The notes below the pieces were generated by a model. The model was not told the origin of the DNA, did not search any database, and saw only the letters and a list, made by a program, of their open reading frames with translations. This document shows positions 304 through 43,966 of a stretch of DNA of 64,000 bases, in pieces; the first letter of the stretch is position 1; each line of letters starts with the position of its first letter. The position numbers were made by a program, and so were the translations under genes. The stretch lies in the sequence record LR756511.1; one strand, 5' to 3'.

Positions 304-312
304 GTACAGCTG
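304..312 (-). promoter_or_regulatory. CAGCTGTAC motif copy 1
   Basis: Exact 9-mer, intergenic, context AAATTCCCAGCTGTACAAAC. Confidence 0.7.
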
Positions 313-331
313 GGAATTTGTGTTCTAGGAC

Positions 332-337
332 TAGATA
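332..337 (+). promoter_or_regulatory. Late-type TANATA box (TAGATA)
   Basis: 5 nt before ATG 343, no SD. Confidence 0.6.
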
Positions 338-342
338 GAAGT

Positions 343-717
343 ATGTTAAACTTCAAAGAATATTGCGAGGCTATGGCTGGCGGTAGAGCAGATGTTTATA
401 AGATCAGACATGATCTACCCTCTAGTGTGGCTGCACCGCCACCACAAATGGGACAAAGAAGCAAGCCATTGGAAGACACTCTTGATTATTCAAAGTTAAA
501 AGCTAGCGATATTGGCAAATATGAAAACGCTTTAACAGCAATCGCCAATTCAATTGTTGCCCCACCTTCTTTTGCTCCTAAGCCTACCAAGATGGGAGAA
601 ATAAGGGAGTTAGAACCAGCCGACATTGCTGCAACTCACGCAAAGGCAGCAATGGCATGGCTAGGTAATTATGCTAGGTATCGCGCAACATCGCATTTGC
701 GCTATGGTACTTATTAA
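343..717 (+). CDS. Small protein with capsid-targeting-like N-terminus (MLNFKEYCE)
   Basis: Start reassigned from track start 118 to ATG 343; the extension overlaps the opposite-strand gene. Confidence 0.6.
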   Translation: MLNFKEYCEAMAGGRADVYKIRHDLPSSVAAPPPQMGQRSKPLEDTLDYSKLKASDIGKYENALTAIANSIVAPPSFAPKPTKMGEIRELEPADIAATHAKAAMAWLGNYARYRATSHLRYGTY

Positions 718-901
718 CGCTTAAACTATAGAACACGTAGGTCGAACCAGTCGTCAGCATTTGCTGTATATTTGGCGAGTGTTGGATTGTTTGGCCACCA
801 ATGACAAAAATACCTTAATGCGTGCCGCTAAGTATGCTGGAATTGATGAAAAGGATTTGGATGCAGCAATTCGCGCATTGGGGAATAGAATTATGCATAG
901 C

Positions 902-1294
902 TTAACGCTCCACCTTCTGTCTCATAATGCCATATTCTTCGTAATTTGGTTCGCCGTTTATAAGCCTAGTAGGTCCACCAAATGTAAATTCAACCTTATG
1001 TAAAGTTTTAACGCCTTGAGTATTGGTAATACGAAATGTTACATTTAACTGGACTTTCTCAAAAAGGCACCCGTCGCAATAACGATATTCCTTTTCCTTG
1101 AAATCCACTTGGTTAGGATCGTCAAAATGATTGTCAATCCATTCCATCACCTTTTCCATATACTTCTTGTCTTCCTCTTCGGACATATCATACTTCTTAT
1201 AAGTATAATCACGCCCCTTTACAGGCATCGTATCTGGCTCTTTTTCATATTTACAACCCGCAAACACCAACATAATTAAAGCTAGCTTTCTCAT
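902..1294 (-). CDS. Putative lipoprotein
   Basis: MRKLALIMLVFAGC signal peptide with lipobox-like Cys. Confidence 0.55.
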   Translation of the reverse strand: MRKLALIMLVFAGCKYEKEPDTMPVKGRDYTYKKYDMSEEEDKKYMEKVMEWIDNHFDDPNQVDFKEKEYRYCDGCLFEKVQLNVTFRITNTQGVKTLHKVEFTFGGPTRLINGEPNYEEYGIMRQKVER

Positions 1295-1614
1295 ACATAC
1301 ACCGTCCTGTAATAATGGGAAACAGGCATACATCCCAACGCCGTCAGTAATGCCTTTATATCTTCACGATTAAAAACAACAACATCTTCCATCCACCTCC
1401 ACCGATATCCGCATCGAGCAAATCTCCTAAAAGGAATCAATTCGCTAGGCAACCTTGTACGTAAAGCTACTATCTGTTCGTATTTGGCGAACAGATAGCA
1501 GTATGGTTTACCGATTTCGCGTTGGCAAAAGCCACGTTCCTCAATATAATCGCACATAACTAGCAATTCATCTATTGGAACGGACTTTGGCTTACGTGGT
1601 TTAACCTTTATCAT
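1291..1614 (-). CDS. Hypothetical protein
   Basis: ORF track; 4-nt overlaps with both neighbours. Confidence 0.55.
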   Translation of the reverse strand: MIKVKPRKPKSVPIDELLVMCDYIEERGFCQREIGKPYCYLFAKYEQIVALRTRLPSELIPFRRFARCGYRWRWMEDVVVFNREDIKALLTALGCMPVSHYYRTVYV

Positions 1615-2576
1615 TTCACTTTAAACCCAAGCTCTCTCATTCTGTTTCTATCCCAAAGTTCAGAATTAGGGTATAATAAATGAAACTCGTCCCATTTATC
1701 CTTCGATATTTGTTGCCTCCACCATCCTTTAATCTCTACATAAAGGTCTTTATCTTTTAAATAAAGATCGCAGTAATAGGTTCCGCAACTCAAATTAAAT
1801 GCCACTTGCCAATCGAAATCAATTTTGTTTGCATTCAAATATTCTACCACTTGCTTCTCGTACCCACCACAGCAAAATAGTTGGTCGCCCGTTTTCCAAT
1901 GTGTAAATTTGCATGTTTTGCGTGCGCTTTGTTTGCTTTTTACCAGAAATTCTCTTTTCAGCATTACATGCTCAACGCCGTATCGTTCTAAGCAAGTTTG
2001 CTTTCGTTTTTCTTTGGCCCGTTCATAACAGCCGTATCCCACAAAAATTGAATTAGGAGTTGTTTCGAACTCTCCGTAATCCCGATCTATAAATTTGCAT
2101 TTTATCTGAGTGTCCACAAAACTATCTTCTACAATTGTAAGCTCTGGCGGTAGTCGAGTCTTAATTTCCTCAAGAGTTAATAGACTGCCGCCACGCTTTT
2201 CGGTTAACTGTCTCTTCCTGTGTTTTTTGAATTTCAACACGTCTCTTGGTTTTGCAATAAATTCCCCATAATCAGCATCAATAAATGTTGCTTCATTTTG
2301 TAGTGAAGTATATGTTTCTTCTTTGATTTTTAAGTATAAAGGCAAACGACTGGCTAGTTCCGCCACGGTCGTTGTCGCACTTTCAGCCTGCTTCTTAATT
2401 CCTCGTTTTCTATGTCCGTGCCCCTTCCACACATCCTTTGGCACCGCCCAAAACTCACCATACTCATTGTCAATGAATTTTGCCTTTTTATGCGTGTTTA
2501 CATAAGTGGATTCGTCTAGCGTAATAAAAGACGGCAAACGTTGTTTTGCTTTGTCAATCGAAATTGGTTTTTTCAA
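1611..2576 (-). CDS. Putative homing endonuclease (repeated DNA-binding modules + PD-(D/E)xK nuclease)
   Basis: Three FIDxxYGEFxxxP repeats, KQTCLERYGVEH segment, C-terminal CDLYLKDKDLYVEIKG; TTG start with GGAGAG SD. Confidence 0.75.
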   Translation of the reverse strand: MKKPISIDKAKQRLPSFITLDESTYVNTHKKAKFIDNEYGEFWAVPKDVWKGHGHRKRGIKKQAESATTTVAELASRLPLYLKIKEETYTSLQNEATFIDADYGEFIAKPRDVLKFKKHRKRQLTEKRGGSLLTLEEIKTRLPPELTIVEDSFVDTQIKCKFIDRDYGEFETTPNSIFVGYGCYERAKEKRKQTCLERYGVEHVMLKREFLVKSKQSARKTCKFTHWKTGDQLFCCGGYEKQVVEYLNANKIDFDWQVAFNLSCGTYYCDLYLKDKDLYVEIKGWWRQQISKDKWDEFHLLYPNSELWDRNRMRELGFKVK

Positions 2577-2577
2577 A

Positions 2578-2618
2578 TTACTCTCCTATATGTATTGGTG
2601 ATACATATAGGAGAGTAA
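2578..2618. promoter_or_regulatory. Perfect 18-bp inverted repeat covering the endonuclease SD
   Basis: TTACTCTCCTATATGTAT-tggtg-ATACATATAGGAGAGTAA. Confidence 0.85.
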
Positions 2619-2624
2619 AAGGTT

Positions 2625-3752
2625 TTAATAGTTCGGGTTAATTATTTTTAATTTAACCCTACCAACTCGTTCATCCCATCGTTCCTTGACAGGAGTAACG
2701 ACGATGCCCTCAGCAATATGGTGCGTAAAATCTCGCATCTGACTGTTTCTGTTAGCCATTACAATCAGTTTGTCGAAATCAAACGCCATATTCTCTTCAA
2801 TTACAGGAACATGCGGAATTTCATACTTATTACAAGTCGCAAGAAAGTCAGGAAAATCCATCCACGTTCCGTCAGGCTTTAATATATCAAAACAAGCAAA
2901 GGTATGCTTGCCTTTACAGCCAAAATCCCATCCTTTTACCATACCATACGCCTCTCCGTAAAGCGTATGGTTCGGATTTGCCACGCAGAATTCCCGAATT
3001 GCAGGAGTATTCTCCAGAACGATCCACCAAAGATTCTTCTTTGGTTGCCAATTCTGAATCTTAACCATTGCCCGCTCAGCCTTCTCTTGAGCCTTTTCTG
3101 GTTCTTTTCCTGTTTTAAAATGGGCAATCAGTTCTTCCATCGTTGCCGTAGGCTTCGTGGGGTATTCACGCTTCCATTCATCGCGGGAACCACAGAAAAG
3201 CTCTCCATCCTTAAAAAGATATTTTGAGGATGCTCCGTGAATCTTCTCAGTTACAGCAACTTGCTCCCCATCAATATAAACCATCCGCCCCCATTTAAGA
3301 AAAGCGTCTACGTCATATTTCGGATAAATGCCAGAAGGCGGCTTAGTCGCTTCCCCGCCAGTCAGGAAATGCGAAGCCTCAATTGCTGGTTGCCAATGTT
3401 CAACCCCCAACTTATCAGCAATATTATCCCCAACCTTAGACCCAGCGGGAGCGGGGACTAACAGCCCATATGAAACATAACCGCGAAGTTTTTCAGTCCT
3501 AATACGAACCTTGCCATCCTTAGCCTTGGGAGCAAGAAAAGCAAATTCTGGCCTACTTACATCTACTTCGCTATCTGGCGGAACCCATGCGGCAAGATCG
3601 CCTACCTTCCATGCGCTTAATTGAACGCAAGAGGAATAATCATAAATATCGACTAACCCAAGTTTATCGGCATTGGGGTGAGTTCGAATCTCTTTAATTT
3701 CCAGAACTTCAACCTTATGGGTTGACTTCTCCACTGTCATTGTGCTTTCCAT
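2625..3752 (-). CDS. RNA ligase, DRB0094/Rnl2-like family with N-terminal OB fold
   Basis: HPNADKL and WKVGDLAAWVPPDS OB region; TEKIHG motif I, LYGEAYG, FACFDI, EGIVV, LKIIN. Confidence 0.85.
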   Translation of the reverse strand: MESTMTVEKSTHKVEVLEIKEIRTHPNADKLGLVDIYDYSSCVQLSAWKVGDLAAWVPPDSEVDVSRPEFAFLAPKAKDGKVRIRTEKLRGYVSYGLLVPAPAGSKVGDNIADKLGVEHWQPAIEASHFLTGGEATKPPSGIYPKYDVDAFLKWGRMVYIDGEQVAVTEKIHGASSKYLFKDGELFCGSRDEWKREYPTKPTATMEELIAHFKTGKEPEKAQEKAERAMVKIQNWQPKKNLWWIVLENTPAIREFCVANPNHTLYGEAYGMVKGWDFGCKGKHTFACFDILKPDGTWMDFPDFLATCNKYEIPHVPVIEENMAFDFDKLIVMANRNSQMRDFTHHIAEGIVVTPVKERWDERVGRVKLKIINPNY

Positions 3753-4200
3753 TACTTCCCTCATTAAAGTTAAAGCCTTTCCAGCGTTCTTTTTGTTCCT
3801 TTGTTGCGTACAGCTGGAATTCCGCATAGGAGGCTGGATGTTCCGTATAGCCGCTATAATACAGCCACGGAACCCCATAATTGTCTACAATCTTAGTTGT
3901 AGCTTCACCTTTGTCTAATGCGTCTTCTAGCCTATCGGCACAATCTACTAATTCCCTATGCAATTCACTATTTTGTCCGTCAATGCAAGGGATGCGACAC
4001 CTACGCAACCGCGATGCAACTTCACTCGCCGCTTCACGCAATACTTCTATTTCGGTATCACGCATCAACAAGCTTTTGACACAATCCGCTTCCATCTGGT
4101 TCAGGGTTTCTTGCGACAATCCTGAATTTTCTAGCAACATTGTGCCTTGCGTCATGCCGACAAGGAACTTTGCTTTTTCTATCGCTTCTTTAATGGTCAT
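3715..4200 (-). CDS. Hypothetical protein
   Basis: ORF track; carries CAGCTGTAC copy 2 at 3808-3816. Confidence 0.55.
   Translation of the reverse strand: MTIKEAIEKAKFLVGMTQGTMLLENSGLSQETLNQMEADCVKSLLMRDTEIEVLREAASEVASRLRRCRIPCIDGQNSELHRELVDCADRLEDALDKGEATTKIVDNYGVPWLYYSGYTEHPASYAEFQLYATKEQKERWKGFNFNEGSNGKHNDSGEVNP
3808..3816 (-). promoter_or_regulatory. CAGCTGTAC motif copy 2
   Basis: Exact 9-mer 55 nt upstream of the RNA ligase ATG, inside the preceding ORF. Confidence 0.55.
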
Positions 4201-4250
4201 GACTTAATCCTTAACCCCATATTTGCGAACAGTGACCAAAATCAACCTCT

Positions 4251-4598
4251 TTAGGGCGCAATGCCTTCATCATAGCTGTAATCATATTCGCCAGTTTTTT
4301 CATTGAAACCCTTCATTTCTTCTACCCAATCCAAGTATGCCTTGGATGGTTCACCAGTGGAAATTCGATATTCTTTGGTTCCATTCTCCCAACGTGCCTG
4401 AACCACCTTAACAGGAGTTCCATTAAGGATTCTGGAAACTTGATCTAAAACCCAAAGCTTATGATGAGCGCCGTCAGTTTGCCCATAACGACCAATAAAT
4501 TCCATCGCCCATTCCTTCGGGCCAAATCCCTCAAACGGTGTTCCAACCAAAGATTCGACAGGAAACGTACCAAGATAACCGTGCATTTTAGTCTCCAA
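4251..4598 (-). CDS. Hypothetical phage protein
   Basis: GGAG SD; YGQTDGAHHKLWVLDQV segment. Confidence 0.65.
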   Translation of the reverse strand: METKMHGYLGTFPVESLVGTPFEGFGPKEWAMEFIGRYGQTDGAHHKLWVLDQVSRILNGTPVKVVQARWENGTKEYRISTGEPSKAYLDWVEEMKGFNEKTGEYDYSYDEGIAP

Positions 4599-4639
4599 AT
4601 AATGTTGCGTAATTTGCTCGGAAACGATATTTTGTTGCC

Positions 4640-4912
4640 ATGTATAACATACTACTTATTTTCATAATAACAGTATCATTGATCGACCAATACTGTCTAG
4701 TCCATTACGTCAGTTATGAAACTGAACTTAACCCTATTGGGAAAGCTTTGATAGCATTCGGCGGGGTGCCATTGTTTGCTCTTGCTAAAGCAGGAGGTAC
4801 AGCTCTAGTAGCATGGCTGTTACTTAGATTTAGACATGCTAAGTTTGCCATGCCAGTTGTGGTTATTTTAGCGGTATTCCAGCTTTGGTTGCTTTTCTTT
4901 ATGCTGTATTAG
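4640..4912 (+). CDS. Small membrane protein, DUF5658-like
   Basis: Hydrophobic helices with D...ELNP...K pattern. Confidence 0.55.
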   Translation: MYNILLIFIITVSLIDQYCLVHYVSYETELNPIGKALIAFGGVPLFALAKAGGTALVAWLLLRFRHAKFAMPVVVILAVFQLWLLFFMLY

Positions 4913-4959
4913 ATATCACCCGAATCACCGATGTTTTAATCATTTATATATTATAATTC

Positions 4960-5841
4960 TTACATTCTTTGCCGTTGTAACCACCAAATAGACGCGCCAG
5001 CATCAAATGAGACAAGCAATGCTAAGGGAATTTCAAAATTACCCAACCAATTACGGGCGCATGTAAAAACAAACACAACCAAGACGATTATTGCTTGCGC
5101 AAATATTAGATACATTTTAGTAGTCGTTTTGAGGCTCATTGTCATCACCTAGCATAACCCTAAGTTGTCTATCAAGCTCCATTTCCTCTTCCCGCGTCAT
5201 TAATACAGGCGGAATCGCTTCAAACTGGATCGCTACATCACCGTCTATATCAACGGTTTGGCACTTAAAGCGACGGTTTTCATAAATGCCATGCTCAGCT
5301 AACTTGTCAGCTTCGTAACGCCCCCAAAGGGTATCGCCATGCTCACTTTTCAAGGTTACATAAGCAATACCATTACGAATTCCATCTACAAATCCTTCAA
5401 ACCGTTCTAGCACTTCCATGTTAGTCCTGTTCGTAAGTGACCATTTGCCCGTTATTGAACACCTTGAGCATATAGTAGCGGCATTTGTCGTCTAGTTCGT
5501 TCTCCTTTAGATACTCGATTTGATCCATCGCCTCTTCTGCTGTCTTATAAGGGCGAACCGTGTCCCCATCCTGTCCAAACTTAATCAAATCCTGTTGGGG
5601 GGTTACTTCAACCGCCCACCACCCCACAACCTTCGGTCGAGCCTTCTTAATCTTAGTCATTCCAAAATCCTTCCAATTGTTCATCATATGGAGAATAGGC
5701 TTCGTCCATATGAGAAGTATAATTAGGCCACACATAACCCTTGCAGAAACTAATAACGTCTTGATTTCCTGAGTCTTTTGCAGCCTCAAGAATCTTTTTA
5801 AATTCCTGCGCCGTCAGCCAGTGTTGCGTTTCGCTTATCAT
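4960..5841 (-). CDS. Block of four short hypothetical ORFs (4960-5148, 5117-5419, 5421-5660, 5653-5841)
   Basis: Tightly packed co-directional ORFs; starts approximate. Confidence 0.5.
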
Positions 5842-7219: not shown

Positions 7220-7258
7220 GATATTCTCCGTTGGTTTTGGTTTCGTCTGGTGTTGTTA

Positions 7259-7267
7259 GTACAGCTG
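7259..7267 (-). promoter_or_regulatory. CAGCTGTAC motif copy 3
   Basis: Exact 9-mer 39 nt upstream of ATG 7219, followed by an A/C-rich leader and GGAG. Confidence 0.7.
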
Positions 7268-7269
7268 CA

Positions 7270-7419
7270 TCATTGATAGTTCAGCATGTAGACCTGATAA
7301 TTAGTGAGTCTATCAGGGTCCATACGCCGTTGTTCTGCCAATACCTGAATCTTCATAGGAAGATTCGGGCTAACGCGACACAAGCCAGCGATAATCTCAC
7401 GCTCTGTTTTAAGCTTCAT
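7270..7419 (-). CDS. 49-aa ORF not in track (MKLKTEREII...)
   Basis: AAGG SD, ATG 7419, TGA 7270. Confidence 0.45.
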   Translation of the reverse strand: MKLKTEREIIAGLCRVSPNLPMKIQVLAEQRRMDPDRLTNYQVYMLNYQ

Positions 7420-7440
7420 TTTTTACCTTAATTTCGTGGT

Positions 7441-7547
7441 CGGTGTCCTGTTTCGATTAGACGATGCCCGCCACTGGCAATAGGGTTACGCTCTTATAGG
7501 CTCTGTCCGTCTATGTGGCTGGCTACGGCGTTGGCCTACTCCCCTAT
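7441..7547 (-). ncRNA. Candidate structured RNA or leader
   Basis: Nested helices ATAGGG/CCCTAT, GTAGGC/GCCTAT, CCGT/ACGG, then a tRNA-5'-like segment; no family recognised. Confidence 0.3.
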
Positions 7548-7882
7548 GTCTCCGATCTGATTCCGTTTGTACAGCTGCAATCTGCCGCGTGTGCTAGCTC
7601 TGGACTAGAGTTTATTCTATGGAATAACTCTTCTGGCGAGTAGCCTGGAAAAGATTTGCCTGTCGCATGAAGATGTTCCGCCTTCCAATGACAGCCCTTG
7701 ACGATATCACAAAGCGTTATGCCGTTTTCTTTTACATAACCGCCATTGGGGAAGCAAGATCGGTCAATAATGTGGTGGCAATCCAGCTTGCAATCATTTC
7801 TACCACACATGACGCAGCGGTAGCCGTCCCGCTCAAACACGGCGGTTCGAAATGCTTCACGGACTTCCTTCTTGTTCTTCAT
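7544..7882 (-). CDS. HNH endonuclease
   Basis: VFERDGYRCVMCG, CHHI, NGITLC...CH. Confidence 0.85.
   Translation of the reverse strand: MKNKKEVREAFRTAVFERDGYRCVMCGRNDCKLDCHHIIDRSCFPNGGYVKENGITLCDIVKGCHWKAEHLHATGKSFPGYSPEELFHRINSSPELAHAADCSCTNGIRSET
7569..7577 (-). promoter_or_regulatory. CAGCTGTAC motif copy 4
   Basis: Exact 9-mer in the HNH 3' end, just upstream of the structured segment. Confidence 0.55.
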
Positions 7883-8078
7883 GCCTTGGCCTTATGCAAT
7901 ACTTTCTATCCTCTGGCGGTATTTGATCCCACGGCACATGGGGATGAAACATCTCGCCATACTTAAAATACTCTTCAAACGAATCAAAACCGCCAAATGC
8001 CAATCGACGTAATCCTTGTGTTACGTCGATTGATTTGAACAATTCATCTAATTCTTTTTTAACTTCGTCGTCTGTCAT
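7857..8078 (-). CDS. Hypothetical protein
   Basis: ORF track. Confidence 0.5.
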   Translation of the reverse strand: MTDDEVKKELDELFKSIDVTQGLRRLAFGGFDSFEEYFKYGEMFHPHVPWDQIPPEDRKYCIRPRHEEQEGSP

Positions 8079-8088
8079 TTGTATTGTC

Positions 8089-8751: not shown

Positions 8752-8764
8752 AAGCTATAAATAG

Positions 8765-9001
8765 TTATTTTGTATACAATCCACCAATATATCCAGCTAC
8801 ACCACTACAAAAACACGCCCATAATCCCATCATGCCGCCGTTCCAAGCGGCATAAAACCATCCTGAAAGGATCACAAATATAATAGCAACCTTAATTAAG
8901 GTTCGCTTATTTGCTTCTGCGAAGCCAAGGGCGAGTTGTCCATTAGCCTTCACAGCAGACCCAACCGCATGAAGGGATTCATTAAGCTTTTGAGTATCCA
9001 T
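8765..9001 (-). CDS. Small membrane protein
   Basis: Two hydrophobic segments. Confidence 0.55.
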   Translation of the reverse strand: MDTQKLNESLHAVGSAVKANGQLALGFAEANKRTLIKVAIIFVILSGWFYAAWNGGMMGLWACFCSGVAGYIGGLYTK

Positions 9002-9003
9002 AC

Positions 9004-9293: not shown

Positions 9294-9299
9294 ATAGCA

Positions 9300-9305
9300 T
9301 ATATA
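9300..9305 (+). promoter_or_regulatory. Late-type TANATA box (TATATA)
   Basis: 5 nt before ATG 9311, no SD. Confidence 0.6.
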
Positions 9306-9310
9306 CCTTT

Positions 9311-9735: not shown

Positions 9736-9755
9736 TAATCTACTCCAAGCGATTG

Positions 9756-14070: not shown

Positions 14071-14090
14071 GTTTCTTTACTCCAAAATGA

Positions 14091-14125
14091 AATGGTCATA
14101 GCTCCACCACGGAGCTATGACCATT
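14091..14125. promoter_or_regulatory. Perfect 15-bp inverted repeat (leader hairpin or terminator-like)
   Basis: AATGGTCATAGCTCC-accac-GGAGCTATGACCATT. Confidence 0.8.
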
Positions 14126-14127
14126 CC

Positions 14128-14136
14128 GTACAGCTG
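14128..14136 (-). promoter_or_regulatory. CAGCTGTAC motif copy 5
   Basis: Exact, intergenic, immediately 5' of the hairpin. Confidence 0.7.
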
Positions 14137-17286: not shown

Positions 17287-17314
17287 ACTTTACTGACGAA
17301 AACCGCTTTGTCAA
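17287..17314 (-). promoter_or_regulatory. Sigma70-like early promoter
   Basis: TTGACA-N16 (ending AG)-TAAAGT. Confidence 0.8.
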
Positions 17315-18261: not shown

Positions 18262-18270
18262 GTACAGCTG
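18262..18270 (-). promoter_or_regulatory. CAGCTGTAC motif copy 6
   Basis: Exact; occupies nearly the whole intergenic gap. Confidence 0.65.
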
Positions 18271-22409: not shown

Positions 22410-24513
22410 TCATGTACAGCTGTAAACTCCACCTAGCCTTAGAAACAAGTCGAACACTTCCTTTGGGACACTATACCACCGCAAGCCATCCCAAACTTCA
22501 TGTTTGTCTCTATTGCCAACCTTATCTTCAATGATTTGTGCTTTGCAAGCTTCCTGAAAAACCCATTGTTTTATCTTGTAATTAGGGTTTGGTGAATCGA
22601 ACTCCGTAAATATCATTCCGCCTCCTGCTAGTTAAATCTGCTGACTAATAGCGTCTACTCCGAATTGAATGCTTTGTAGACCGCTCTCAATATCCTGCAC
22701 CCCTGTATCCAAATCTTCCAATAGGGATTCAAGGTCATGGTAAAGCTCACGTATTGCATCCCTTGTCTTTGCCAATTCGTTCTTCTTGGCTTCAATTTGC
22801 GTACAAAGGGACTGCACCTTTTTAAGCTGAATCTTGGTCATTAGTAGGTCCAGTTAGCGGACTTAACCTCTGTAGATTCTGGATAGAATACTACATGAAA
22901 TTCCGCTCGTTGTGAAGGCTTATCGCCACGATCAAAGAAAAATACGATTAAATAGTAATTTGGTCCCACTCTCTCAATGCCGCTACGATCTTTCACGGTT
23001 TGAGAAATGAAGTTAAAATTACTGAATACATTATCAACAATTTCGTGTCGCTCGTCATTCAGGTTCATGTTAATCCTTAGTAATTATAGGCATAACAAGC
23101 CCAACAAATAACCCCAATGATGGGCACCAAAATAGTCAAATAGCCAGCGAACAATCGCAGGAGATTGTAGGGCACCATGTCCAAATTATAGCTACCTGTC
23201 AGACGGAGTATCAAACAGATAACCCCATGCCACAAGCCGCCAACAGCATAGGCAATTGCGCCAATGTATCCGTCAATCATCTCCCAACTCCCATTTCAAA
23301 AAGGCTTCAAGACCTTTCATAAATTCGTCTCGTCCGTAGCGATACTTAATCTTAACAACGCCATCCTCAATTTCAGCCCACCAGTCATTGCCAGAATTAA
23401 GCTGCCACTTATAACCGCCACCGAATGAAGTATCCTTGGAGAAGACGCCTTCATCCGTATCGCAAACAATACGGGCGATACGCTTCATGAGCGATTCTTC
23501 TTTGTCTGGTTTGACCCAGCGACGGTGTAACTTGAAGCTAATTTCCATCTTTCTTCTCCACCATTGGCCAGATAATACCATACTTCCGAAGAACGACACG
23601 CGCTTCAGGGGAATTGTTCACGAATTCCGTGAACATTTGGATTGCGATGGTATTAGGAATCCTGGCGCGGACAGGAACCGTGGCAGGATCATAGCCATGA
23701 GTCATTACTAGCTCGTTGCCAAGCTCCATGAGTACAGCTTTAAGATTCACTTTTCCTCCAAAGCTGGTAGCTATCCCACACTTTTGTTAAGTAATTAACG
23801 ATTCCAACAAAGGTTTTGCGCGATCCTTTACCTTTAAGCCTGAGAACAGGACTATCGCCTTTATAGATTAGGAATTCAATTTGGGAATCGGTAAGGTCGG
23901 CCATATCCGACTTAGCCCTTTTAACCATTTTACCTACGTCTTCGACAGAAAGCTCCCACTCTCTTCCTGCTGTTTCGAGCATGAAGGCTTGGCTTGCTGG
24001 TCTAAACGTTAGACGGAAGTTGATTAGTTTCATGGGGTTTTGCGAATTTGCAAGTGTGTGTTGTCAGTGGTTGATTGCAATACTGACATAGCCCTCGCCG
24101 TTTACATTCCCAGCGACGTTGGATTTCTTTATGAAGTTCCGCGTCCGTGTATTCATCCAGGTCTTTTGGATAGCCCATTATGCACTCTTCTGGCAAATTG
24201 GATTGGTGGTGTACAAAAACTCCGTAAGCTCAGGATCAAGACTGGCAAGCCAGTCGCATTGATTTTGGCTTAGCTCAAATTGCCCATACTTGTTTTTACC
24301 TGAAGTAATTTCGAGTGCGCTTTCGCCCATTGCGCACCAGTAAGTTGAGCTTGCCTCAAACTGACGGCACTTGTAGTATACCATCGCTGGCGTATCGGCG
24401 CCAGGATCATCGGGAACCACGCGCTGACGATCAAGAACAACGCGCAACCCACGATACTCCCAAATCTTGTAGCGGTCGTCAGAGTGAACCAGCTTGCTTC
24501 GTGTGAATTTCAT
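22410..24513 (-). CDS. Block of about nine short hypothetical ORFs
   Basis: Tightly packed 64-117 aa ORFs from track; variant motif AAGCTGTAC at 24539-24547 precedes the block. Confidence 0.5.
22414..22422 (-). promoter_or_regulatory. CAGCTGTAC motif copy 7
   Basis: Exact; 46 nt upstream of the histone-like gene. Confidence 0.65.
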
Positions 24514-24546
24514 AGTTTTGCCCTCCTGCACCGCTGTTGTACAGCT

Positions 24547-24705
24547 TCAACGGTCACGGTCATCGTCCTGATAAGGCAAATAATCGCTATCGTAGCGATG
24601 CTGTTTGTTGATTTGTCTACGATAAGCCTCCAATTCAGCCCGAAGGGACTTTATTGTAGCTTTCAATTGCTCATTCTCTTTCCGAAGCTGGTCTAGTTCA
24701 TCCAT
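24547..24705 (-). CDS. 52-aa coiled-coil ORF not in track (MDELDQLRKENEQLK...)
   Basis: Starts 8 nt after the -10 at 24714; heptad pattern. Confidence 0.55.
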   Translation of the reverse strand: MDELDQLRKENEQLKATIKSLRAELEAYRRQINKQHRYDSDYLPYQDDDRDR

Positions 24706-33253: not shown

Positions 33254-33854
33254 GTTTGTGCCTTCTTTGGGGGTTGCCCGTAATCGCGGAAGCCGCACTT
33301 CGACTTCGCAAGTGTCTTGTACAGCTGTGAATCGCCCCGTAGGGTAACTGTATATGGGTTCCCTAATGGACGACTGTACTCGTCTGGTGCCGATGGAGGC
33401 ATCCCATCCCAATATTCCTTAATATACTTGTCCCGATGGTCCTGAGACAAATGAAGGCTAAAACCATCGGGACGGGCGCCCCACCCTCGTTCACTTTCTT
33501 CCCAAAGCTGAACAAATACCTTCGGCATTATTCACCTTCCTTTACAAGCTTCAAAGAAGCTGCCTTACTACCCCAATCGCAACCAGAAATGTCTTTAAGG
33601 TCTTGCAAATCCAAGACGCCCCTTTTAATCAAAATTTCTACTAAACGACCTAAAGCCTCGCAGACGACTTTAGGCTGATTTTCAAGGAAGACCCTCTTTT
33701 CGTCGCTGTCGTAAAGGATGGAATCATACATGAATCGTTGAATGCTGTCCCTTTCCTTACCGACTTCGCCCTTCCAAGTAACCTTGTCGTATTCAACATC
33801 CACAAGCCACCTCCTTAAACCGCATAACGCAACGGATGAGCGTGTTCGCCACAC
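33250..33854 (-). CDS. Two hypothetical ORFs (33250-33528, 33528-33854)
   Basis: ORF track. Confidence 0.5.
33319..33327 (-). promoter_or_regulatory. CAGCTGTAC motif copy 8
   Basis: Exact; 65 nt upstream of ATG 33253, inside the preceding ORF. Confidence 0.5.
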
Positions 33855-34141: not shown

Positions 34142-34162
34142 GATGTGTCTCCCTTGTAAATG

Positions 34163-34194
34163 ACCAATGCCTATGTGACAACATAGGCATTGGT
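34163..34194. promoter_or_regulatory. Perfect 14-bp inverted repeat in the SWIM gene leader
   Basis: ACCAATGCCTATGT-gaca-ACATAGGCATTGGT. Confidence 0.8.
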
Positions 34195-34201
34195 ACAGCT
34201 G
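34193..34201 (-). promoter_or_regulatory. CAGCTGTAC motif copy 9
   Basis: Exact; overlaps the hairpin arm by 2 nt. Confidence 0.7.
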
Positions 34202-35602: not shown

Positions 35603-35611
35603 GTACAGCTG
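35603..35611 (-). promoter_or_regulatory. CAGCTGTAC motif copy 10
   Basis: Exact, intergenic, context AAATTCACAGCTGTACAAAC. Confidence 0.7.
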
Positions 35612-38956: not shown

Positions 38957-39520
38957 TCATAAAGCGAACCTGAAACCAAAACTATACCTATCAACCTCCG
39001 TATACACGCAATGCCAATATAGGTGAGTCTTTTCTACTTTAAATGCTCTAAAGTTCCACCCCTTTTTTTCCCACTCCGTTATAACTTTGTTGCCTTGAGC
39101 ATAACGAAAAAAGCTTTTATCATCTTCGTCTACATAACTCGCATATACCCGCCAGCCATGCATGTTTGAGTTACTATGCCAACCCATGTAACCCATATAT
39201 TCTTTGCCAGTAGATTCGTCCTTATACTTCTTTGGATAATGAAAGCTGCCTGAGACAGAAATTAGTTCACTGTTCGGGAAAAGTCCAGCCGCCCATCGCC
39301 GTACAGCTTTTGGATCGTAGTGTTCTAACCAGTATGTAAAAACGTCTGGAGCTACAACTACATCCCCTTTTTTCCTAATGTCAAGTAAATCCGCTTCAGA
39401 TAACTTAGGATTATCGTTCGGCTCACCTACTTGGCGTCCAGGGGGTTTATAGTCTGAGATAACCTTGTCTAATGCGGTCGCTAGTGATTTTACTCTTGAG
39501 TTTATAGGCAATTTAATCAT
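38957..39520 (-). CDS. Putative 2OG-Fe(II)/cupin-like oxygenase
   Basis: YMGWHSN...WHCV...RYSFGF; TAAATT box 5 nt before ATG. Confidence 0.55.
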   Translation of the reverse strand: MIKLPINSRVKSLATALDKVISDYKPPGRQVGEPNDNPKLSEADLLDIRKKGDVVVAPDVFTYWLEHYDPKAVRRWAAGLFPNSELISVSGSFHYPKKYKDESTGKEYMGYMGWHSNSNMHGWRVYASYVDEDDKSFFRYAQGNKVITEWEKKGWNFRAFKVEKTHLYWHCVYTEVDRYSFGFRFAL

Positions 39521-39889: not shown

Positions 39890-40825
39890 TCACGCACCAT
39901 TGAAAAACTCCTGTTGATCGACATACTTAAATCCGCAACGCTTAGCAAACGTTTCATCCGTCGTTTGATCGCCAACCATAATGCATTGAGAAGCATCTAA
40001 TTTATACTTCTCAATGAAATGAACCCCAATTCCGCAATGAGGCTTTCTACAATAACAAACGACTGGCGGAATTGAATGTGTACAGAAGAAATACTCAATA
40101 TCGTGTCCCAACTGGCGATTTGTCTCTTCAAAACAATCAACCGCCTGTTGAACGGTTAGCTTTCCCTTCGCAACACCAGATTGATTGGACGCACCAAGCA
40201 ACCTGTAACCTTTTTTGACGTATTCATCAATCTTTTCTTTACGCCCAGGAAGAATCTTAACTTCATTAGGCTTCGTAGGATAGCCATACTCGTTCTCCGT
40301 TACTCGTAAGGTATCATCGTAGTCCAGAATCAATGCTTTATTCTTGTAAGCTGGGTCTTTCTTACGAACAAATGGCACCACTTCCACCGAAGCAAAACCT
40401 TCAGCAGTTGTCGGCTTCTGGAATTTCTTCTTGTAATTAAACAACGCAACAGGCGGGAATAGATTTGGATTCTTTTCGGTCTTGAAGTCGGCAGGATCAA
40501 GCAACCGACCCTTTAATTCAATCATTCGTTTGCAAGCATTGAATTGGGCATCTTCGAAAGACGTATCAAGCAAAACAGCCTTAATGGGAAGCTTCAGTGT
40601 TTTTGCGGCAGCAATAATGCTTTTACGACTAGCAACGTCCATGTAGGTATTATCAAGCACGAACTTCTCAATCCCCTTCTTAAAGAGATTAAGAACCAAT
40701 TCCGCCTGTTGGTCAAGTGTGCCACCGTCCATGTCGCGGTTTAGGCGATGATAGCCTTGATCGACATATTTCTTGACGCATGTGGTCTTACCCGCTGCAT
40801 TGTAGCCAAGTAAAACGATAATCAT
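39890..40825 (-). CDS. Polynucleotide kinase-phosphatase (P-loop + HAD-IIIA)
   Basis: GYNAAGKTT, VLDNT; DYDDTL, ASNQSG, CRKP, MVGD...D. Confidence 0.85.
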   Translation of the reverse strand: MIIVLLGYNAAGKTTCVKKYVDQGYHRLNRDMDGGTLDQQAELVLNLFKKGIEKFVLDNTYMDVASRKSIIAAAKTLKLPIKAVLLDTSFEDAQFNACKRMIELKGRLLDPADFKTEKNPNLFPPVALFNYKKKFQKPTTAEGFASVEVVPFVRKKDPAYKNKALILDYDDTLRVTENEYGYPTKPNEVKILPGRKEKIDEYVKKGYRLLGASNQSGVAKGKLTVQQAVDCFEETNRQLGHDIEYFFCTHSIPPVVCYCRKPHCGIGVHFIEKYKLDASQCIMVGDQTTDETFAKRCGFKYVDQQEFFNGA

Positions 40826-41561
40826 TTGTATCGTTCCAAAAAAGTTGTTTCCACCCAAATGTAAGAACCAGTACCATGCCCGCGACGGTGTTTGGTTCGA
40901 ATTCTTAGGTTATGATCTTTTAACAGCCCGTTAATGACTTTAATAAGGTCTACAACGTAATGGGTATCGGTATAGCGTGCCGATTCTGGCACGCCATTGT
41001 CTCTACACCATTGTTCGTCTGATTTAGAGGGCACGCCAATCTACCTCTTTATGTTTTTCAACTGTCCAATTAGCATTTTGAAGGTCTTTGTCGCTTAGAC
41101 ATTGGACAGTCGTATAACGGTCATCAACGAATAGAAACGTGCAAACCTGTTCTTCTCTGGCGTCGAGATATTCAGTCCAGTCTTCCTCTTCGTCATACTG
41201 AAGACCGTGAACCTCTTCGCCGTCAACAAATATATGATACCCTTTTGATTCTAGCTTTGACAGCTTTTTAAAATCCTCAACTGTTATCATTCCCTAATCC
41301 TTATTTTGCAATCTCTTCAATTTGAATGTCAATCTCGCCCCCAAAGAGCGAATTAGAAATCCGCAGGATTTTATTTTCGTCCAGTTTGACAAGCACTGGC
41401 GATCCTTTAAAACCACAACTGTCAGCTAGCTCTTTTTTAGCAGCCTTTAGCGATTCGTTACTTTTGAAGCTCTCTTGTAACAATTTGTTAGCAACTGTGC
41501 TAACGTCACTATGGACTTTTAATGCCTTAAAGTAATTTTCTATTGCAGTCGCTTTAGTCAT
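40822..41561 (-). CDS. Three hypothetical ORFs (40822-41034, 41024-41290, 41301-41561)
   Basis: ORF track. Confidence 0.5.
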
Positions 41562-41571
41562 TTCTTAATCC

Positions 41572-42111
41572 TTATCTACGATTCCTTTTAACCTTCTCAA
41601 TAACGTCTTCAAGTTCCTTCGCCATCTCAAGGTCTGCATTCCTGCAAATCTCCAGAAGCGTATAAGACTCATCCACGGTCTTCTGAACGAGCTTATAAGG
41701 CGCGTTCTTCATATCGAGAAGGTTATCCCAACGATCAACCATCTTGATACGCTGTGCATCAGAACTCATTTCCCGCATATGCTGGAAACGAACCTTATTC
41801 TTTTCCGCTCGCGGACGCCCTGCCCATTACGCACCTTCCGTTGGGAACGTTAATTCCTTCACCAGAAGGTAGCAATCCAGCGGGAAATTATCCTTAACTT
41901 CCGCCGCGAATTCGGGTGCGCAGTCTTCAATAACATCGTGCAACCATGCCGCCGCAATATGAACATCGCGGATATAACGCAACGATGCTACTTTGTTCGC
42001 AACTCGTTCAGGGTGAACAATATACGCAACACCTTCGGACCACTTTCGGGTCTGTCCCGCGTGTGCCCGCCGTGCTAAATCCGCAGCCTGTGCAATCATT
42101 TCCTGATCCAT
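41572..42111 (-). pseudogene. RelA/SpoT-type HD hydrolase (Mesh1/SAH-like) interrupted by in-frame TAA
   Basis: AHAGQTRK..YIVHP..VA..AAWLHDVIED, TAA at 41827-41829, then the same frame continues to IKMVDRWDN. Confidence 0.75.
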
Positions 42112-42120
42112 ATTTAACTC

Positions 42121-43966
42121 CTACCGCCTTGGACTTCCAGGGTAACGATTACCCTGCATTTTCATATATTTTGCCAATGGCATTCCAGCATCGGGATGAA
42201 CCCACATTGCTAAAGAGGCACCAGCAAAATGCCAATAGTCTCTTCGAACCTTTTCCAGCTTCTTTTTTGCGGCACTTAACCGATAATACGTGATGGGACT
42301 TTCTGATCTTGTTGGGTCGCCAAACTTGACCGCAACTTCACTTTGGCTGTAATAATAGTATGCCCCTTCCTTGTTAAGCAAAACTATTATTATACCGCCA
42401 ACAGGATGCAATTCTCTTGCAACCTGATTTATTTCGCGCGAGTCTTCATCTTCCGCACGGAATAGGCAGTAGTGTTCCATTGTAGTCCCTTTCACACAAG
42501 AATCACTTCTGTATGCGGGCTAATGTAAGCCTTAACCTCACGGGAGCCTTCCTTACGGCTAACGCAAACACGTCGGCGGTCGCCATGCATATAGGCTTTA
42601 GTCCAGAAGACACGCCCATTCTTTACGCAGAAACGCTTAAACTTGACGCCAGGACGAGTTAATTCATGTGCTTTCATTTGTTCCTCCTTCGTACAGCTGC
42701 ATCAACCAACCAGACGAACAGCATGGTTATTATAACATAGGCCCGCTGCCAGCCCAGGATTCTCTGCTTCCCACTTATCATCAAGGTCTATCCAGTCCAT
42801 TACCTGTCATCTCTTGCAGCCTGTGAAGCTGCCTCTAATTGTCCCCTAATATCCGCTAAACCAGCGCCTAATTCACCTTCCCACAATTTATGATTCTGAA
42901 CATCATGAGCTAATTGCTTCGCTTTTGCTGCTATTAGCTCCAGCCGTATCGCTACTTCCTGATCGTTTCTCATCCCATTTTCTCCTATTTTCGATATACT
43001 TATCTAAATCCATCCGCACTGATGCACTTGCCCTTTCTAAAAGAAGGTGCAAATGCTCGTAAATATAATGAATTTCACCATGAAAGCGAAAGGTCTTTCC
43101 CGTTTCGTCTACAGCAAGAACGGGATTGTTATTCTCTTTTCTAACCGCATGAACGGCAAGTGAGTTGGTTGCGGCTACAATCTCTATCTGATCGTCCACA
43201 TAGCAAAGACATGGCGTATCATATGGCATCCAGCAACCAACATAGGCTTTTAATGCTAGTTCCCTATTGGGTTCGCCAATGGTATGTGCAATGAATCGAC
43301 AAAGATTAGGAAAGTTTGTCATTTCCCTTCTTCTCCATTTCTTCCTTTACCCATTGGTCGTTCTTGACATTGACATAGATTGCCATTGCAACAATACCTA
43401 TTATGGATACAATAGCAACGACACTACGATACTCCTGTGGGAGCCAGTCCGCTAATTTGAGCGTAATGAATGCCCAAGGAAGAAACACATAAAGAAAAAA
43501 CTTGATAAATTTGCCTGTTATTATCATTTCCCAAGAATAGCCTCAGCTTCTTTGGAAGGAACAGGGACTTCATCTTTATAATTATCTAACGCCCACTTTA
43601 GAAGGCGATTAGCATAAGCGGAAGCGTTCTTGGCGTTACCGCTTTTCATGCTTTCGCTTGCCTGAGTGAGCAGGCGTGCCGCTACTTCGTCGTCCACAGA
43701 AAAAGAAACAGGATATTTTGCACTCATAAATTGCACCGTTGTCATGGGTTAAACCTCTTCGTCTTGTTCATCATCGCACTCAATGGCATAATCAAGAATT
43801 TCTGGCATTAATTCGCTATACTCGTCCAAGAACTCCATATGGGCGAATGTTCCATCCGCACCGCCCTCGTCAATGAAATAGCCTGGACATTCCCGCACTT
43901 CGGAAATGATCTGCGTAGGGTCATAACCGAATTTTGCTATCTTTTCTTTAAGCTTCCGTTCTGCTT
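42121..43966 (-). CDS. Block of short hypothetical ORFs
   Basis: ORF track plus two small unlisted ORFs in 42700-42975; one membrane ORF 43306-43527. Confidence 0.5.
42691..42699 (-). promoter_or_regulatory. CAGCTGTAC motif copy 11
   Basis: Exact; followed directly by GAAGGAGG SD and ATG 42677. Confidence 0.7.

What the first reader, a model, noticed from the sequence alone, without database searches (positions are those of the whole stretch)
304..42699. Oriented 9-mer CAGCTGTAC marks a probable phage-specific regulon
Seen: 11 exact copies found by eye (304, 3808, 7259, 7569, 14128, 18262, 22414, 33319, 34193, 35603, 42691), all on the minus strand, plus a variant AAGCTGTAC at 24539-24547. 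Ten lie within 65 nt upstream of a minus-strand ATG. The two fully intergenic copies at the head of gene blocks share AAATTC(A/C)CAGCTGTACAAAC. No sigma70 -10 follows them, and at 42691 the SD comes straight after. A rough estimate at about 40% GC is well under one copy per strand by chance. Inference: a core promoter for a phage sigma factor or RNA polymerase (a middle class distinct from the early and late signals here), an activator/operator box, or an mRNA processing site. I do not recognise it as a described element.
Basis: partly seen in the sequence, partly recalled or inferred. Interest (0 to 1): 0.75.

Follow-up and report, generated by a model that had tools for sequence, protein, structure and literature searches.

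The report
Phage sigma-factor promoter motif AGCTGTAC
The repeated word CAGCTGTAC is part of an invariant 8-base signal (AGCTGTAC) that marks about 130 gene starts in a 595-kb uncultured giant phage and is most likely the promoter read by one of the phage's own sigma factors: a new example of a known kind of phage gene switch, not yet backed by transcript data.

Summary
All 11 CAGCTGTAC copies are real, on the minus strand and far above chance (0.24 expected). The 9-mer is only a subset. The invariant unit is the 8-mer AGCTGTAC, usually preceded by A or C. It occurs 16 times in the window and 134 times in LR756511.1, the 595-kb uncultured huge phage that holds the window. Of the 134 copies, 126 are co-oriented with genes, 59% are intergenic (genome 9%) and 107 lie in the first 105 kb. 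One block of about 50 small genes has a copy per gene, often 12-30 nt after an intrinsic terminator. No -35 or sigma70 -10 element accompanies it. Start codons sit 10-11 nt after it, mostly without a Shine-Dalgarno (SD) sequence, or at least 22 nt after it. This fits a single-element, -10-like promoter with a start site about 10 nt downstream. No RNA polymerase gene was found, but there are several sigma factors. A divergent 333-aa sigma is itself preceded by the motif plus a sigma70-type promoter. Six related huge-phage contigs keep this arrangement, and two use AATTGTAC instead. Best reading: the promoter class of a phage sigma, a new member of a known kind (compare phiEco32 gp36/AATGTA, T4 late TATAAATA). 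No transcript data exist, so this is unproven.

The parts
304..312 (-). CAGCTGTAC copy in the roughly 50-nt gap between divergent genes (minus gene ATG at 294, plus gene ATG about 343); heads a minus-strand block
3808..3816 (-). CAGCTGTAC copy 55 nt upstream of the RNA ligase gene (2625-3752, minus)
4797..4804 (-). AGCTGTAC core preceded by G, inside coding sequence by my crude calls; function doubtful
7259..7267 (-). CAGCTGTAC copy 2 nt after the upstream stop codon and 39 nt before the ATG of a 473-aa ORFan (5798-7219)
7569..7577 (-). CAGCTGTAC copy near the 3' end of an upstream ORF; no ATG within 80 nt
14128..14136 (-). CAGCTGTAC copy 2 nt after a stop codon, 57 nt before the HNH-endonuclease gene (13348-14070)
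14089..14127 (-). Strong hairpin followed by a T-run, starting right after the 14128 copy (-30.7 kcal/mol, z -7.1). It looks like a terminator for upstream transcription. A start site about 10 nt after the motif would fall inside its 5' arm (inference).
17287..17314 (-). Sigma70-type promoter TTGACA-N16-TAAAGT in front of the 740-aa gene; a member of a separate promoter class (about 25 intergenic copies genome-wide)
18262..18270 (-). CAGCTGTAC copy directly after a TAA stop; in-frame ATGs 2 and 11 nt downstream (177-aa gene 17726-18259)
22414..22422 (-). CAGCTGTAC copy 46 nt before the ATG of a 140-aa gene (21945-22367)
23732..23740 (-). AAGCTGTAC copy with an ATG 2 nt downstream
24539..24547 (-).
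33319..33327 (-). CAGCTGTAC copy 65 nt before an ATG preceded by an SD
34193..34201 (-). CAGCTGTAC copy, intergenic, 51 nt before an ATG
34161..34197 (-). Hairpin starting within or just after the 34193 copy (-22.7 kcal/mol, z -3.8), followed by a weak T-run
35603..35611 (-). CAGCTGTAC copy in a divergent intergenic gap (plus gene ATG about 35640); ATG 11 nt downstream without an SD
39301..39309 (-). AAGCTGTAC copy inside coding sequence by crude calls; function doubtful
42691..42699 (-). CAGCTGTAC copy, the last one in the window; GAAGGAGG follows at once and the ATG is 13 nt downstream (61-aa gene 42492-42677)

Best explanation
AGCTGTAC, with weak flanks T-W-R-[A/C] before it and W-A-A after it, is the core of a phage-specific promoter class. 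It works as a single -10-like ('extended -10') element, AGCTG-TACWAA, with no -35 partner. It is read by host RNA polymerase core carrying a phage-encoded sigma factor. Transcription would start about 10 nt downstream of the core. Some genes would then be expressed as leaderless or nearly leaderless mRNAs (ATG 10-11 nt after the core). The rest would have leaders long enough for a Shine-Dalgarno (SD) sequence.

The most likely cognate factor is a divergent 333-aa sigma at record 152574-153575, outside the window. It appears to be expressed first from a host sigma70-type promoter and then from its own AGCTGTAC promoter. This would drive a delayed-early/middle regulon of about 130 sites, mostly small ORFan and RNA-repair genes in the first 105 kb.

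Shown here: the statistics, the layout, the conservation and the presence of sigma genes. Inferred: that the motif is a promoter, where the start site lies, which sigma reads it, and when the class is active.
For: (1) Counts. There are 134 cores genome-wide, and it is the most over-represented 8-mer in the genome and in gene-upstream windows. Of these, 126/134 are co-oriented with local genes and 79/134 are intergenic, against 9.3% intergenic sequence.

(2) Regional restriction on one continuous gene strand. Observed versus expected: 58 vs 0.5 in 0-19.3 kb, 49 vs 2.3 in 19.3-105 kb, 24 vs 5.3 in 105-300 kb, and 3 vs 8 in 300-595 kb.

(3) Terminator-then-motif cassettes. 22/77 A-type copies have a GC hairpin plus T-run ending 12-30 nt upstream, against 43/1059 control windows (sequences).

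(4) Some copies sit in about 50-nt gaps between divergent genes, where no upstream sense transcript exists.

(5) The distance from core to ATG is bimodal. There is a sharp peak at 10-11 nt (16 sites, mostly no SD), nothing at 15-21 nt, then 22 nt or more. The same 10-12 nt peak appears in a relative that uses a different motif (9/18 sites).

(6) There is no second conserved block and no -10 downstream. One-mismatch variants are at chance except AGCTTTAC.

(7) No RNA polymerase was found. Sigma genes were found: 333 aa, 165 aa and a gp55-like one.

(8) The sigma333 gene is preceded by CAGCTGTAC. Its operon head carries TAGCTGTAC plus TTGACA-N16-TAAGAA. All six orthologous loci have a TGTAC-type motif 35-55 nt upstream of the sigma ATG. 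Four use AGCTGTAC and two use AATTGTAC.

(9) Relatives found through the RNA ligase carry TTAGCTGTACAAG (6 vs 0 on the other strand), TTTAATTGTACCAAG (17 vs 1) or AGACTGATGTAAG (7 vs 0) upstream of genes.

(10) GTAC and CAGCTG are counter-selected elsewhere in the genome (44 of 56 CAGCTG sites lie inside the motif), so the motif is kept by selection.

(11) There is a precedent: phiEco32 gp36 promoters have the single element AATGTA centred at -11.5 (PMC12276001).
Against: There are no transcript 5' ends, no protein-DNA data and no cultured host.

About 40% of cores lie in coding sequence by my crude gene calls. Some are probably internal or non-functional.

Several genes with the ATG 10-14 nt after the core also have a good SD between core and ATG (for example window 42691, GAAGGAGG). 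That SD would be useless if transcription started about 10 nt downstream, so the start site could be at or inside the core.

Two window copies (14128, 34193) are followed at once by terminator-like hairpins.

The link to sigma333 rests on conserved gene-upstream placement only. The sigma333 residue differences between AGCT- and AATT-type phages are confounded by phylogeny (7 sequences).

An essentially invariant 8-mer is unusually strict for a sigma-type promoter.
Confidence: 0.7

Rival explanations
1. It is an RNA-level signal: a cleavage or processing site, or a protein-binding site in polycistronic early mRNAs (CAGCUGUAC), that creates or marks the 5' ends of individual cistrons.
For: The motif is strictly on the sense strand and usually lies between cistrons, often directly after the upstream stop codon. 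Most C-type copies have no terminator upstream, so they would be transcribed from further upstream (2/44). A fixed 10-11 nt distance to the AUG could also arise from processing that makes short-leader mRNAs.
Against: About 20 copies follow intrinsic terminators by 12-30 nt. Some head divergent blocks where no upstream sense RNA is expected. There is no conserved secondary structure or flanking sequence and no Rfam family. Placement in front of a sigma gene next to a sigma70-type promoter, conserved in 7 phages, is typical of promoters.
Confidence: 0.08
2. It is the binding site of a phage transcription activator or repressor that works with host sigma70 polymerase, like the T4 MotA box at -30.
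For: It is short, highly conserved and oriented. It contains palindromic halves (AGCT, GTAC; AATT, GTAC in relatives) that a DNA-binding protein could read. At three sites a sigma70-like promoter lies 20-30 nt downstream of the motif.
Against: No -10-like element lies at a fixed distance downstream. In about 20 cases the ATG is only 10-14 nt after the motif, leaving no room for a -10 element and a start site. The almost perfect strand bias argues against a symmetric operator.
Confidence: 0.08
3. It is the promoter of a phage-encoded RNA polymerase, either single-subunit T7/N4-like or split multisubunit phiKZ-like, possibly delivered in the virion.
For: The layout is AT-rich, then an invariant 8-bp core, then AT-rich (TTATAA-AGCTGTAC-TTAA). 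Near-invariance of the core resembles T7-type promoters. The motif serves early-type genes.
Against: No catalytic signatures (NADFDGD/DFDGD, T7 motifs A/B/C) were found in six-frame translations. The only motif-B-like hit is a family A DNA polymerase. The 19 largest proteins have no RNA polymerase domain. The phage is T4-like (gp20 portal, gp55-like sigma), a group reported to lack RNA polymerases but to encode sigma factors (PMC7824862). Not every protein was scanned, and very divergent polymerases could be missed.
Confidence: 0.07
4. It is a promoter read by a host alternative sigma factor or by unmodified host holoenzyme, with no phage factor involved.
For: The motif precedes genes that look early (small ORFans, RNA repair), which in many phages are read by host polymerase alone. 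The TG-TAC-N-A-A layout keeps the T-12/A-11 positions of a -10 hexamer.
Against: A separate, canonical sigma70-like class (TTGACA-N16/17-TAAAGT) exists in the same genome. Related phages use different 5' halves (AGCT, AATT, CTGA), which suggests a factor that evolves with the phage. The motif is tied to a conserved phage sigma gene.
Confidence: 0.07

Closest known systems
phiEco32 gp36-dependent middle/late promoters (single element AATGTA centred at -11.5; PMC12276001)
   Same: One short conserved element near -10 with no -35. It shares the TGTA core (AGC-TGTA-C; relatives AAT-TGTA-C and CTGA-TGTA-A). It is read by host core polymerase carrying a phage sigma made from a sigma70 promoter. Placing TGTA as in phiEco32 predicts a start 8-9 nt after the core, close to the 10-11 nt ATG peak.
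   Different: There is no detectable sequence homology between gp36 and any ORF of this phage. The conserved core is longer (8 invariant bases) and GC-containing. There are about 130 sites in a 595-kb genome. The start site is not mapped.
T4 late promoters (TATAAATA) read by gp55 with gp33/gp45 (my knowledge; gp55 annotation)
   Same: A nearly invariant 8-bp single -10 element without a -35, phage sigma-directed, in a phage with a T4-type portal.
   Different: This phage has its own gp55-like sigma. It also has a separate AT-rich TATATA/TATAAATA-like class concentrated in the 300-595 kb region, where the portal and baseplate-type genes lie. AGCTGTAC is virtually absent from that region (3 copies vs 8 expected), so it is a different class.
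Bacillus phage SPO1 gp28 (middle) sigma cascade and ECF-type autoregulated sigma factors (my knowledge)
   Same: A host sigma reads early promoters and a phage sigma gene. The phage sigma then redirects the polymerase to a new class. The sigma gene carries its own promoter type (positive feedback).
   Different: Those promoters have two blocks (-35 and -10). Here only one block is conserved.
T7-type single-subunit RNA polymerase promoters (my knowledge)
   Same: A very strict, oriented core flanked by AT-rich sequence, with lineage-specific variants in related phages.
   Different: No such polymerase gene was found. The conserved stretch is about 14 nt rather than 18-23.

Membership tests
Phage sigma-dependent single-element (-10-like) promoter (T4 late / phiEco32 gp36 type) | Located upstream of genes and co-oriented with them, enriched in intergenic DNA | tested here: met
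   126/134 co-oriented; 59% intergenic vs 9.3% of the genome
Phage sigma-dependent single-element (-10-like) promoter (T4 late / phiEco32 gp36 type) | Single conserved block with no -35 partner | tested here: met
   Information content and k-mer enrichment show nothing beyond positions -5 to +3 around the core
Phage sigma-dependent single-element (-10-like) promoter (T4 late / phiEco32 gp36 type) | Phage encodes a sigma factor and no RNA polymerase of its own | tested here: met
   Sigma70_r2/r4 proteins of 165 and 333 aa and a gp55-like protein; no polymerase signatures. Not all proteins were scanned.
Phage sigma-dependent single-element (-10-like) promoter (T4 late / phiEco32 gp36 type) | Transcripts start at a fixed short distance downstream of the element | not testable with these tools
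   Only indirect: ATG peak at 10-11 nt and a gap at 15-21 nt
Phage sigma-dependent single-element (-10-like) promoter (T4 late / phiEco32 gp36 type) | A specific sigma binds or initiates at the element | tested here: inconclusive
   The motif is conserved upstream of the sigma333 gene in 7 phages, with a lineage-specific variant. This is correlation only.
phiEco32 gp36 family (homology) | The sigma is homologous to gp36 | tested here: not met
   BLASTP and phmmer of gp36 against the phage find nothing
Canonical sigma70 -35/-10 promoter | TTGACA-like and TATAAT-like hexamers 16-18 bp apart | tested here: not met
   No such blocks around the motif. A separate class with them exists elsewhere.
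T4 MotA-box middle promoter | Box at about -30 followed 11-13 bp later by a sigma70 -10 element | tested here: not met
   No -10 at a fixed distance. The ATG is often only 10-14 nt after the motif. MotA/AsiA homologues were not searched genome-wide.
T7/N4-type phage RNA polymerase promoter | Cognate phage RNA polymerase gene present | tested here: not met
   Regex in six frames plus Pfam on the largest proteins
RNA processing site (RNase III / RegB-like) | Conserved RNA structure or cleavage-generated 5'-monophosphate ends within read-through transcripts | tested here: inconclusive
   No conserved structure. Hairpins follow only 2 of 44 C-type copies. The chemistry of the ends cannot be tested here.
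Oriented genome-maintenance motifs (Chi, KOPS) | Strand-biased along the replichore, not tied to gene starts or intergenic DNA | tested here: not met
   Strong intergenic and start-proximal enrichment, and restriction to the first 300 kb of a single gene-strand block

The most novel reading that the evidence does not exclude
A family of huge phages carries a self-contained sigma/promoter pair: a divergent 333-aa sigma plus one strict 8-bp element. The pair exists in at least two specificity 'alleles' (AGCTGTAC and AATTGTAC) that co-vary with residues of the sigma. It initiates right at the start codon of many genes, making leaderless mRNAs. Expression of more than 100 takeover genes would then be independent of both the host sigma70 and ribosome-binding sites.
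Probability: 0.3. Interest if true: 0.7.

Novelty: new member of a known kind. Interest (0 to 1): 0.55.

Why it matters
Huge phages known only from metagenomes have essentially no mapped regulatory signals. It also assigns about 130 mostly unknown genes to one co-regulated class.

The conserved pairing with a very divergent sigma, and the natural AGCT/AATT variants, give a directly testable sigma-promoter specificity pair. Such a pair could serve as an orthogonal expression part.

If the leaderless reading holds, it would show a phage bypassing both host promoter and ribosome-binding-site recognition for its takeover genes.

Tried and rejected
1. Searching the 17-mer TATAAAGCTGTACTTAA in IMG/VR gave 10 single, chance hits.

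2. Searching two AAGCTGTAC copies 200-230 nt apart in IMG/VR gave over 100 loci. The copy-rich ones were unrelated: 78-bp tandem arrays in AT-rich contigs (L039, L057), coding repeats (L028, L085, L096) and iteron-like inverted ACAAAAGCTGTACC repeats (L036).

3. The RNA ligase as a query in IMG/VR found no relatives. GenBank phages hold no close relative: the best portal match is 31% identical.

4. Looking for a phage RNA polymerase by catalytic motifs and by Pfam on large proteins found nothing. One motif-B-like hit turned out to be a split family A DNA polymerase.

5. I first read a 'split sigma' at record 190.4-191.3 kb. The C-terminal ORF is a free-standing sigma70 region 4, but the N-terminal ORF has no sigma homology, so that idea is dropped.

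6. A phmmer search with T4 gp55 gave only sub-threshold hits (best E 0.045; the ORF later confirmed as gp55-like scored E 0.64). A gp55-like protein was recognised by eye among those hits and confirmed with PHROGs.

7. phiEco32 gp36 has no homologue in this genome.

8. A literature search for the motif returned only primer noise, and Rfam found nothing in the window.

9. The sigma54, ECF two-block, sigma28 and extended -10 consensus sequences were compared by eye and do not fit.

10. The Chi/KOPS and uptake-sequence ideas were rejected because of the tie to gene starts.

Full report
**Origin of the window**

The window is bases 62001-126000 of LR756511.1, an unannotated 595,163-bp 'uncultured phage' genome. 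I fetched the whole record in twelve pieces. It is a bacteriophage. It has a T4-type portal (gp20 family, carrying an intein), a DnaE-type polymerase, a split family A polymerase and an intein-bearing ribonucleotide reductase. GenBank phages contain no close relative; the best portal match is 31% identical.

**Checking the observation**

- One search finds exactly the 11 listed CAGCTGTAC copies, all on the minus strand, against 0.24 expected.
- The AAGCTGTAC variant at 24539 is real.
- Ten of the 11 copies have an ATG within 65 nt downstream.
- Copies 304 and 35603 share 20 nt of sequence.
- Both of those copies lie in roughly 50-nt gaps between divergently oriented genes.

**The real unit is an 8-mer**

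- A one-mismatch scan showed that AAGCTGTAC occurs 77 times in the genome (4.7 expected), more than CAGCTGTAC at 44.
- The invariant core is AGCTGTAC, with 134 copies (the same total on the untouched loci).
- It is the most over-represented 8-mer in the genome under a maximal-order Markov model. It is also by far the most enriched word in gene-upstream windows.
- Single-mismatch versions of the core are at chance, except AGCTTTAC.
- The flanks are weak: T-W-R-[A/C] before the core and W-A-A after it. No other conserved block lies within 45 nt on either side.

**Distribution along the genome**

- Of the 134 cores, 126 are co-oriented with the local gene strand. The motif switches strand exactly where gene orientation switches, near 19.5 kb.
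- 79 cores are intergenic, although only 9.3% of the genome is intergenic by my crude gene calls.
- Gene orientation stays mostly minus from 20 to 440 kb, but the motif is regional:

| Region | Copies observed | Copies expected |
|---|---|---|
| 0-19.3 kb (about 50 small genes) | 58 | 0.5 |
| 19.3-105 kb | 49 | 2.3 |
| 105-300 kb | 24 | 5.3 |
| 300-595 kb | 3 | 8 |

The last region holds the portal and baseplate-type genes. So the motif marks a class of genes rather than a strand.

In the window, the marked part (1-42.7 kb) holds ORFans plus an RNA ligase, a polynucleotide kinase/phosphatase, an NAD synthase and an HNH endonuclease. The unmarked part (43-64 kb) holds sugar-modification enzymes, protein kinases and a PP2C phosphatase.

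**Evidence that it is a promoter**

1. In the 0.7-19 kb block almost every gene is preceded by the same cassette: GC-rich hairpin, T-run, TTATAA-AGCTGTAC-(T/A)(T/A)AA, a short leader, an SD, then the ATG. A terminator-like hairpin ends 12-30 nt before the core at 22 of 77 A-type copies, against 43 of 1059 control windows. Transcription ending there has to restart, and the core is the only invariant sequence available.
2. Copies at the heads of divergent blocks cannot be processing sites in an upstream sense transcript.
3. The distance from the core to the first ORF-opening ATG is bimodal. There is a sharp peak at 10-11 nt (16 sites, mostly without an SD), nothing at 15-21 nt, and then 22 nt or more.
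   - This pattern is expected if transcription starts about 10 nt after the core. Genes are then either leaderless or have a leader long enough to hold an SD.
   - Read this way, the element is AGCTG-TACWAA, a -10-like hexamer that keeps T-12/A-11 with an adjoining TG.
4. GTAC is three-fold depleted in the genome, and 44 of the 56 CAGCTG sites lie inside the motif. The motif is therefore maintained against a general avoidance of these palindromes.

**Points that do not fit neatly**

- Several short-spacing genes have a good SD between core and ATG, for example window 42691. The start could therefore lie at the core itself.
- Copies 14128 and 34193 are followed at once by strong hairpins. If the start is about 10 nt downstream, it falls inside the 5' arm. 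Upstream transcripts would then terminate while new ones escape. This is inference.

**Other promoter classes**

- A canonical sigma70-like class, TTGACA-N16/17-(TCGTAG)TAAAGT/TAAGAT, has about 25 intergenic copies between 36 and 520 kb. One is in the window at 17287-17314.
- AT-rich TATATA/TATAAATA-like words are enriched upstream of genes in the 300-595 kb region.

**What might read the motif**

No RNA polymerase signature was found in six-frame translations or in the 19 largest proteins. The one motif-B-like hit is a DNA polymerase. This agrees with a published survey reporting that T4-like jumbo phages lack RNA polymerases but encode sigma factors (PMC7824862).

The genome encodes four sigma-related proteins:

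- **A gp55-like late sigma**, record 464287-464820.
- **A 165-aa sigma with regions 2 and 4**, record 299705-300202. It is a conserved core gene next to PhoH, behind a conserved TATATA-type upstream sequence.
- **A free-standing sigma70 region-4 protein**, record 190451-190825.
- **A divergent 333-aa sigma**, record 152574-153575. Sigma70_r2 scores E 4e-5, and nearly all its PDB matches (19 of 21, including the best) are sigma factors aligned over regions 2.2-2.4.

The 333-aa gene lies 47 nt downstream of a CAGCTGTAC copy. Its operon begins with TAGCTGTAC followed by TTGACA-N16-TAAGAA. The next large gene, an AAA ATPase, has another CAGCTGTAC.

**Relatives**

Homologues of the window's RNA ligase led to three related contigs:

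- L139 uses TTAGCTGTACAAG: 6 copies on the gene strand and 0 on the other.
- L140/L141 use TTTAATTGTACCAAG: 17 vs 1, with the ATG 10-12 nt downstream in 9 of 18 sites.
- L138 uses AGACTGATGTAAG: 7 vs 0.

In our phage and in L138, L139 and L140, a copy lies upstream of the RNA ligase gene or its operon.

Orthologues of the 333-aa sigma (43-66% identical, about 38 clusters) occur on contigs up to 543 and 623 kb.

- The six contexts I fetched keep the order DUF6166, sigma, SpoU methylase, AAA ATPase, ArdC-like.
- In all six, the sigma gene has a TGTAC-type motif 35-55 nt before its ATG: CAGCTGTAC twice, AAGCTGTAC, TAGCTGTAC, and CAATTGTAC twice.
- All six also have a sigma70-like promoter at the operon head, preceded by another motif copy in four of them.
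- The two AATT-type sigmas differ from the five AGCT-type ones at a few positions of the region 2.4/3.0-like stretch (WRC to WQC/WQA; IV.. to IFD.). With seven sequences this cannot be separated from shared ancestry.

**Interpretation**

The best-supported account is a sigma cascade:

1. Host sigma70 polymerase reads the TTGACA-type promoters, including the one before the 333-aa sigma gene.
2. That sigma then directs the polymerase to AGCTGTAC promoters, its own among them. This turns on about 130 sites, mostly takeover and RNA-repair genes.
3. A gp55-like sigma handles the late class.

The closest described analogue is phiEco32. There the phage sigma gp36 reads a single AATGTA element centred at -11.5 (PMC12276001). 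The TGTA core is shared, but gp36 has no detectable homologue here. So this system works like phiEco32's without belonging to that family.

My confidence is about 0.7 that the motif is a sigma-type promoter. I put roughly even odds on the specific sigma and on the start-site position. The rivals each get less than 0.1: an RNA processing site, an activator box, a phage RNA polymerase promoter, and a host alternative sigma.

**Limits**

- Gene calls for the whole genome came from my own simple codon-usage caller. They are approximate and were checked only locally against database gene calls.
- In some scripts the single N of the record, which lies outside the window, was replaced by a placeholder letter only so that translation would run. 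The motif totals match counts made on the unmodified loci.
- There are no transcript or binding data.

Noticed in passing
whole record LR756511.1, window included (window: CCGG 0 copies): Extreme restriction-site avoidance. CCGG is completely absent from 595 kb (about 1,000-1,150 expected). 19 of the 64 six-base palindromes have zero copies, among them GGATCC, CTGCAG, CTCGAG, CCATGG, GCATGC and GAGCTC. GTAC is three-fold and GGCC two-fold depleted. CCGG is also absent from all six related loci L146-L151.
   Followed up: partly
window 17287-17314 (-); about 25 further intergenic copies at record 36-520 kb: A separate, well-conserved sigma70-type promoter class, TTGACA-N16/17-(TTCGTAG)TAAAGT/TAAGAT. 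At several places it lies 20-30 nt downstream of an AGCTGTAC copy, forming tandem promoters of two classes (record 138282, 154042, 437814).
   Followed up: partly
record 190451-190825 (-), outside the window: A free-standing 124-aa protein that is essentially sigma70 region 4 alone (E. coli RpoD region 4, E 5e-10). It lies behind a sigma70-like promoter at record 191954. It could compete with host sigma70 for the beta-flap or for -35 elements, which would favour -35-independent promoters. That is speculation.
   Followed up: partly
record 700-19000 (+), outside the window: Between the motif and the SD, many cassettes share a second conserved leader element, (T)TTACCTCTAAC, 9-20 nt after the core. 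Its function is unknown; it may partly reflect duplicated cassettes.
   Followed up: no
record 153576-153622 and L146-L151 upstream of the sigma gene: The 5' leader of the 333-aa sigma gene is conserved across seven phages: a CA-rich run (AAACCCAAACCCAAA) followed by GAAGGTAGG and the ATG.
   Followed up: no
record 464287-464820 (+) and 302796-302844: A gp55-like late sigma (phrog_234) and exact T4-type TATAAATA / TATATA words upstream of genes in the 300-595 kb region. This suggests a T4-like late transcription system in a 595-kb phage.
   Followed up: partly
window 2625-3752, 37246-38925, 39890-40858 (all -): An RNA-repair / NAD set in the motif-marked region: RNA ligase, glutamine-dependent NAD synthase, and polynucleotide kinase/phosphatase. 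Elsewhere in the genome are NAPRTase, an RlaP-like nucleotidyltransferase and a CCA-adding/poly(A) polymerase-like enzyme.
   Followed up: no
window 44000-64000: A motif-free cluster of sugar-nucleotide and glycosyltransferase genes (two DegT aminotransferases, GDP-mannose dehydratase-like, epimerase, GT2/GT11/GT92), two Ser/Thr protein kinases and a PP2C phosphatase.
   Followed up: no
record 444162-448055 (+) and 531014-533587 (-): Inteins with homing-endonuclease domains in the ribonucleotide reductase large subunit, and an intein in the T4-type portal protein.
   Followed up: no
IMG/VR loci L036, L039, L057: Unrelated contigs that happen to repeat AGCTGTAC. L036 has about 14 copies of ACAAAAGCTGTACC on both strands in 600 bp, iteron- or origin-like. 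L039 and L057 (AT-rich contigs of 210-260 kb from one sample) have long arrays of a 78-bp tandem unit.
   Followed up: no
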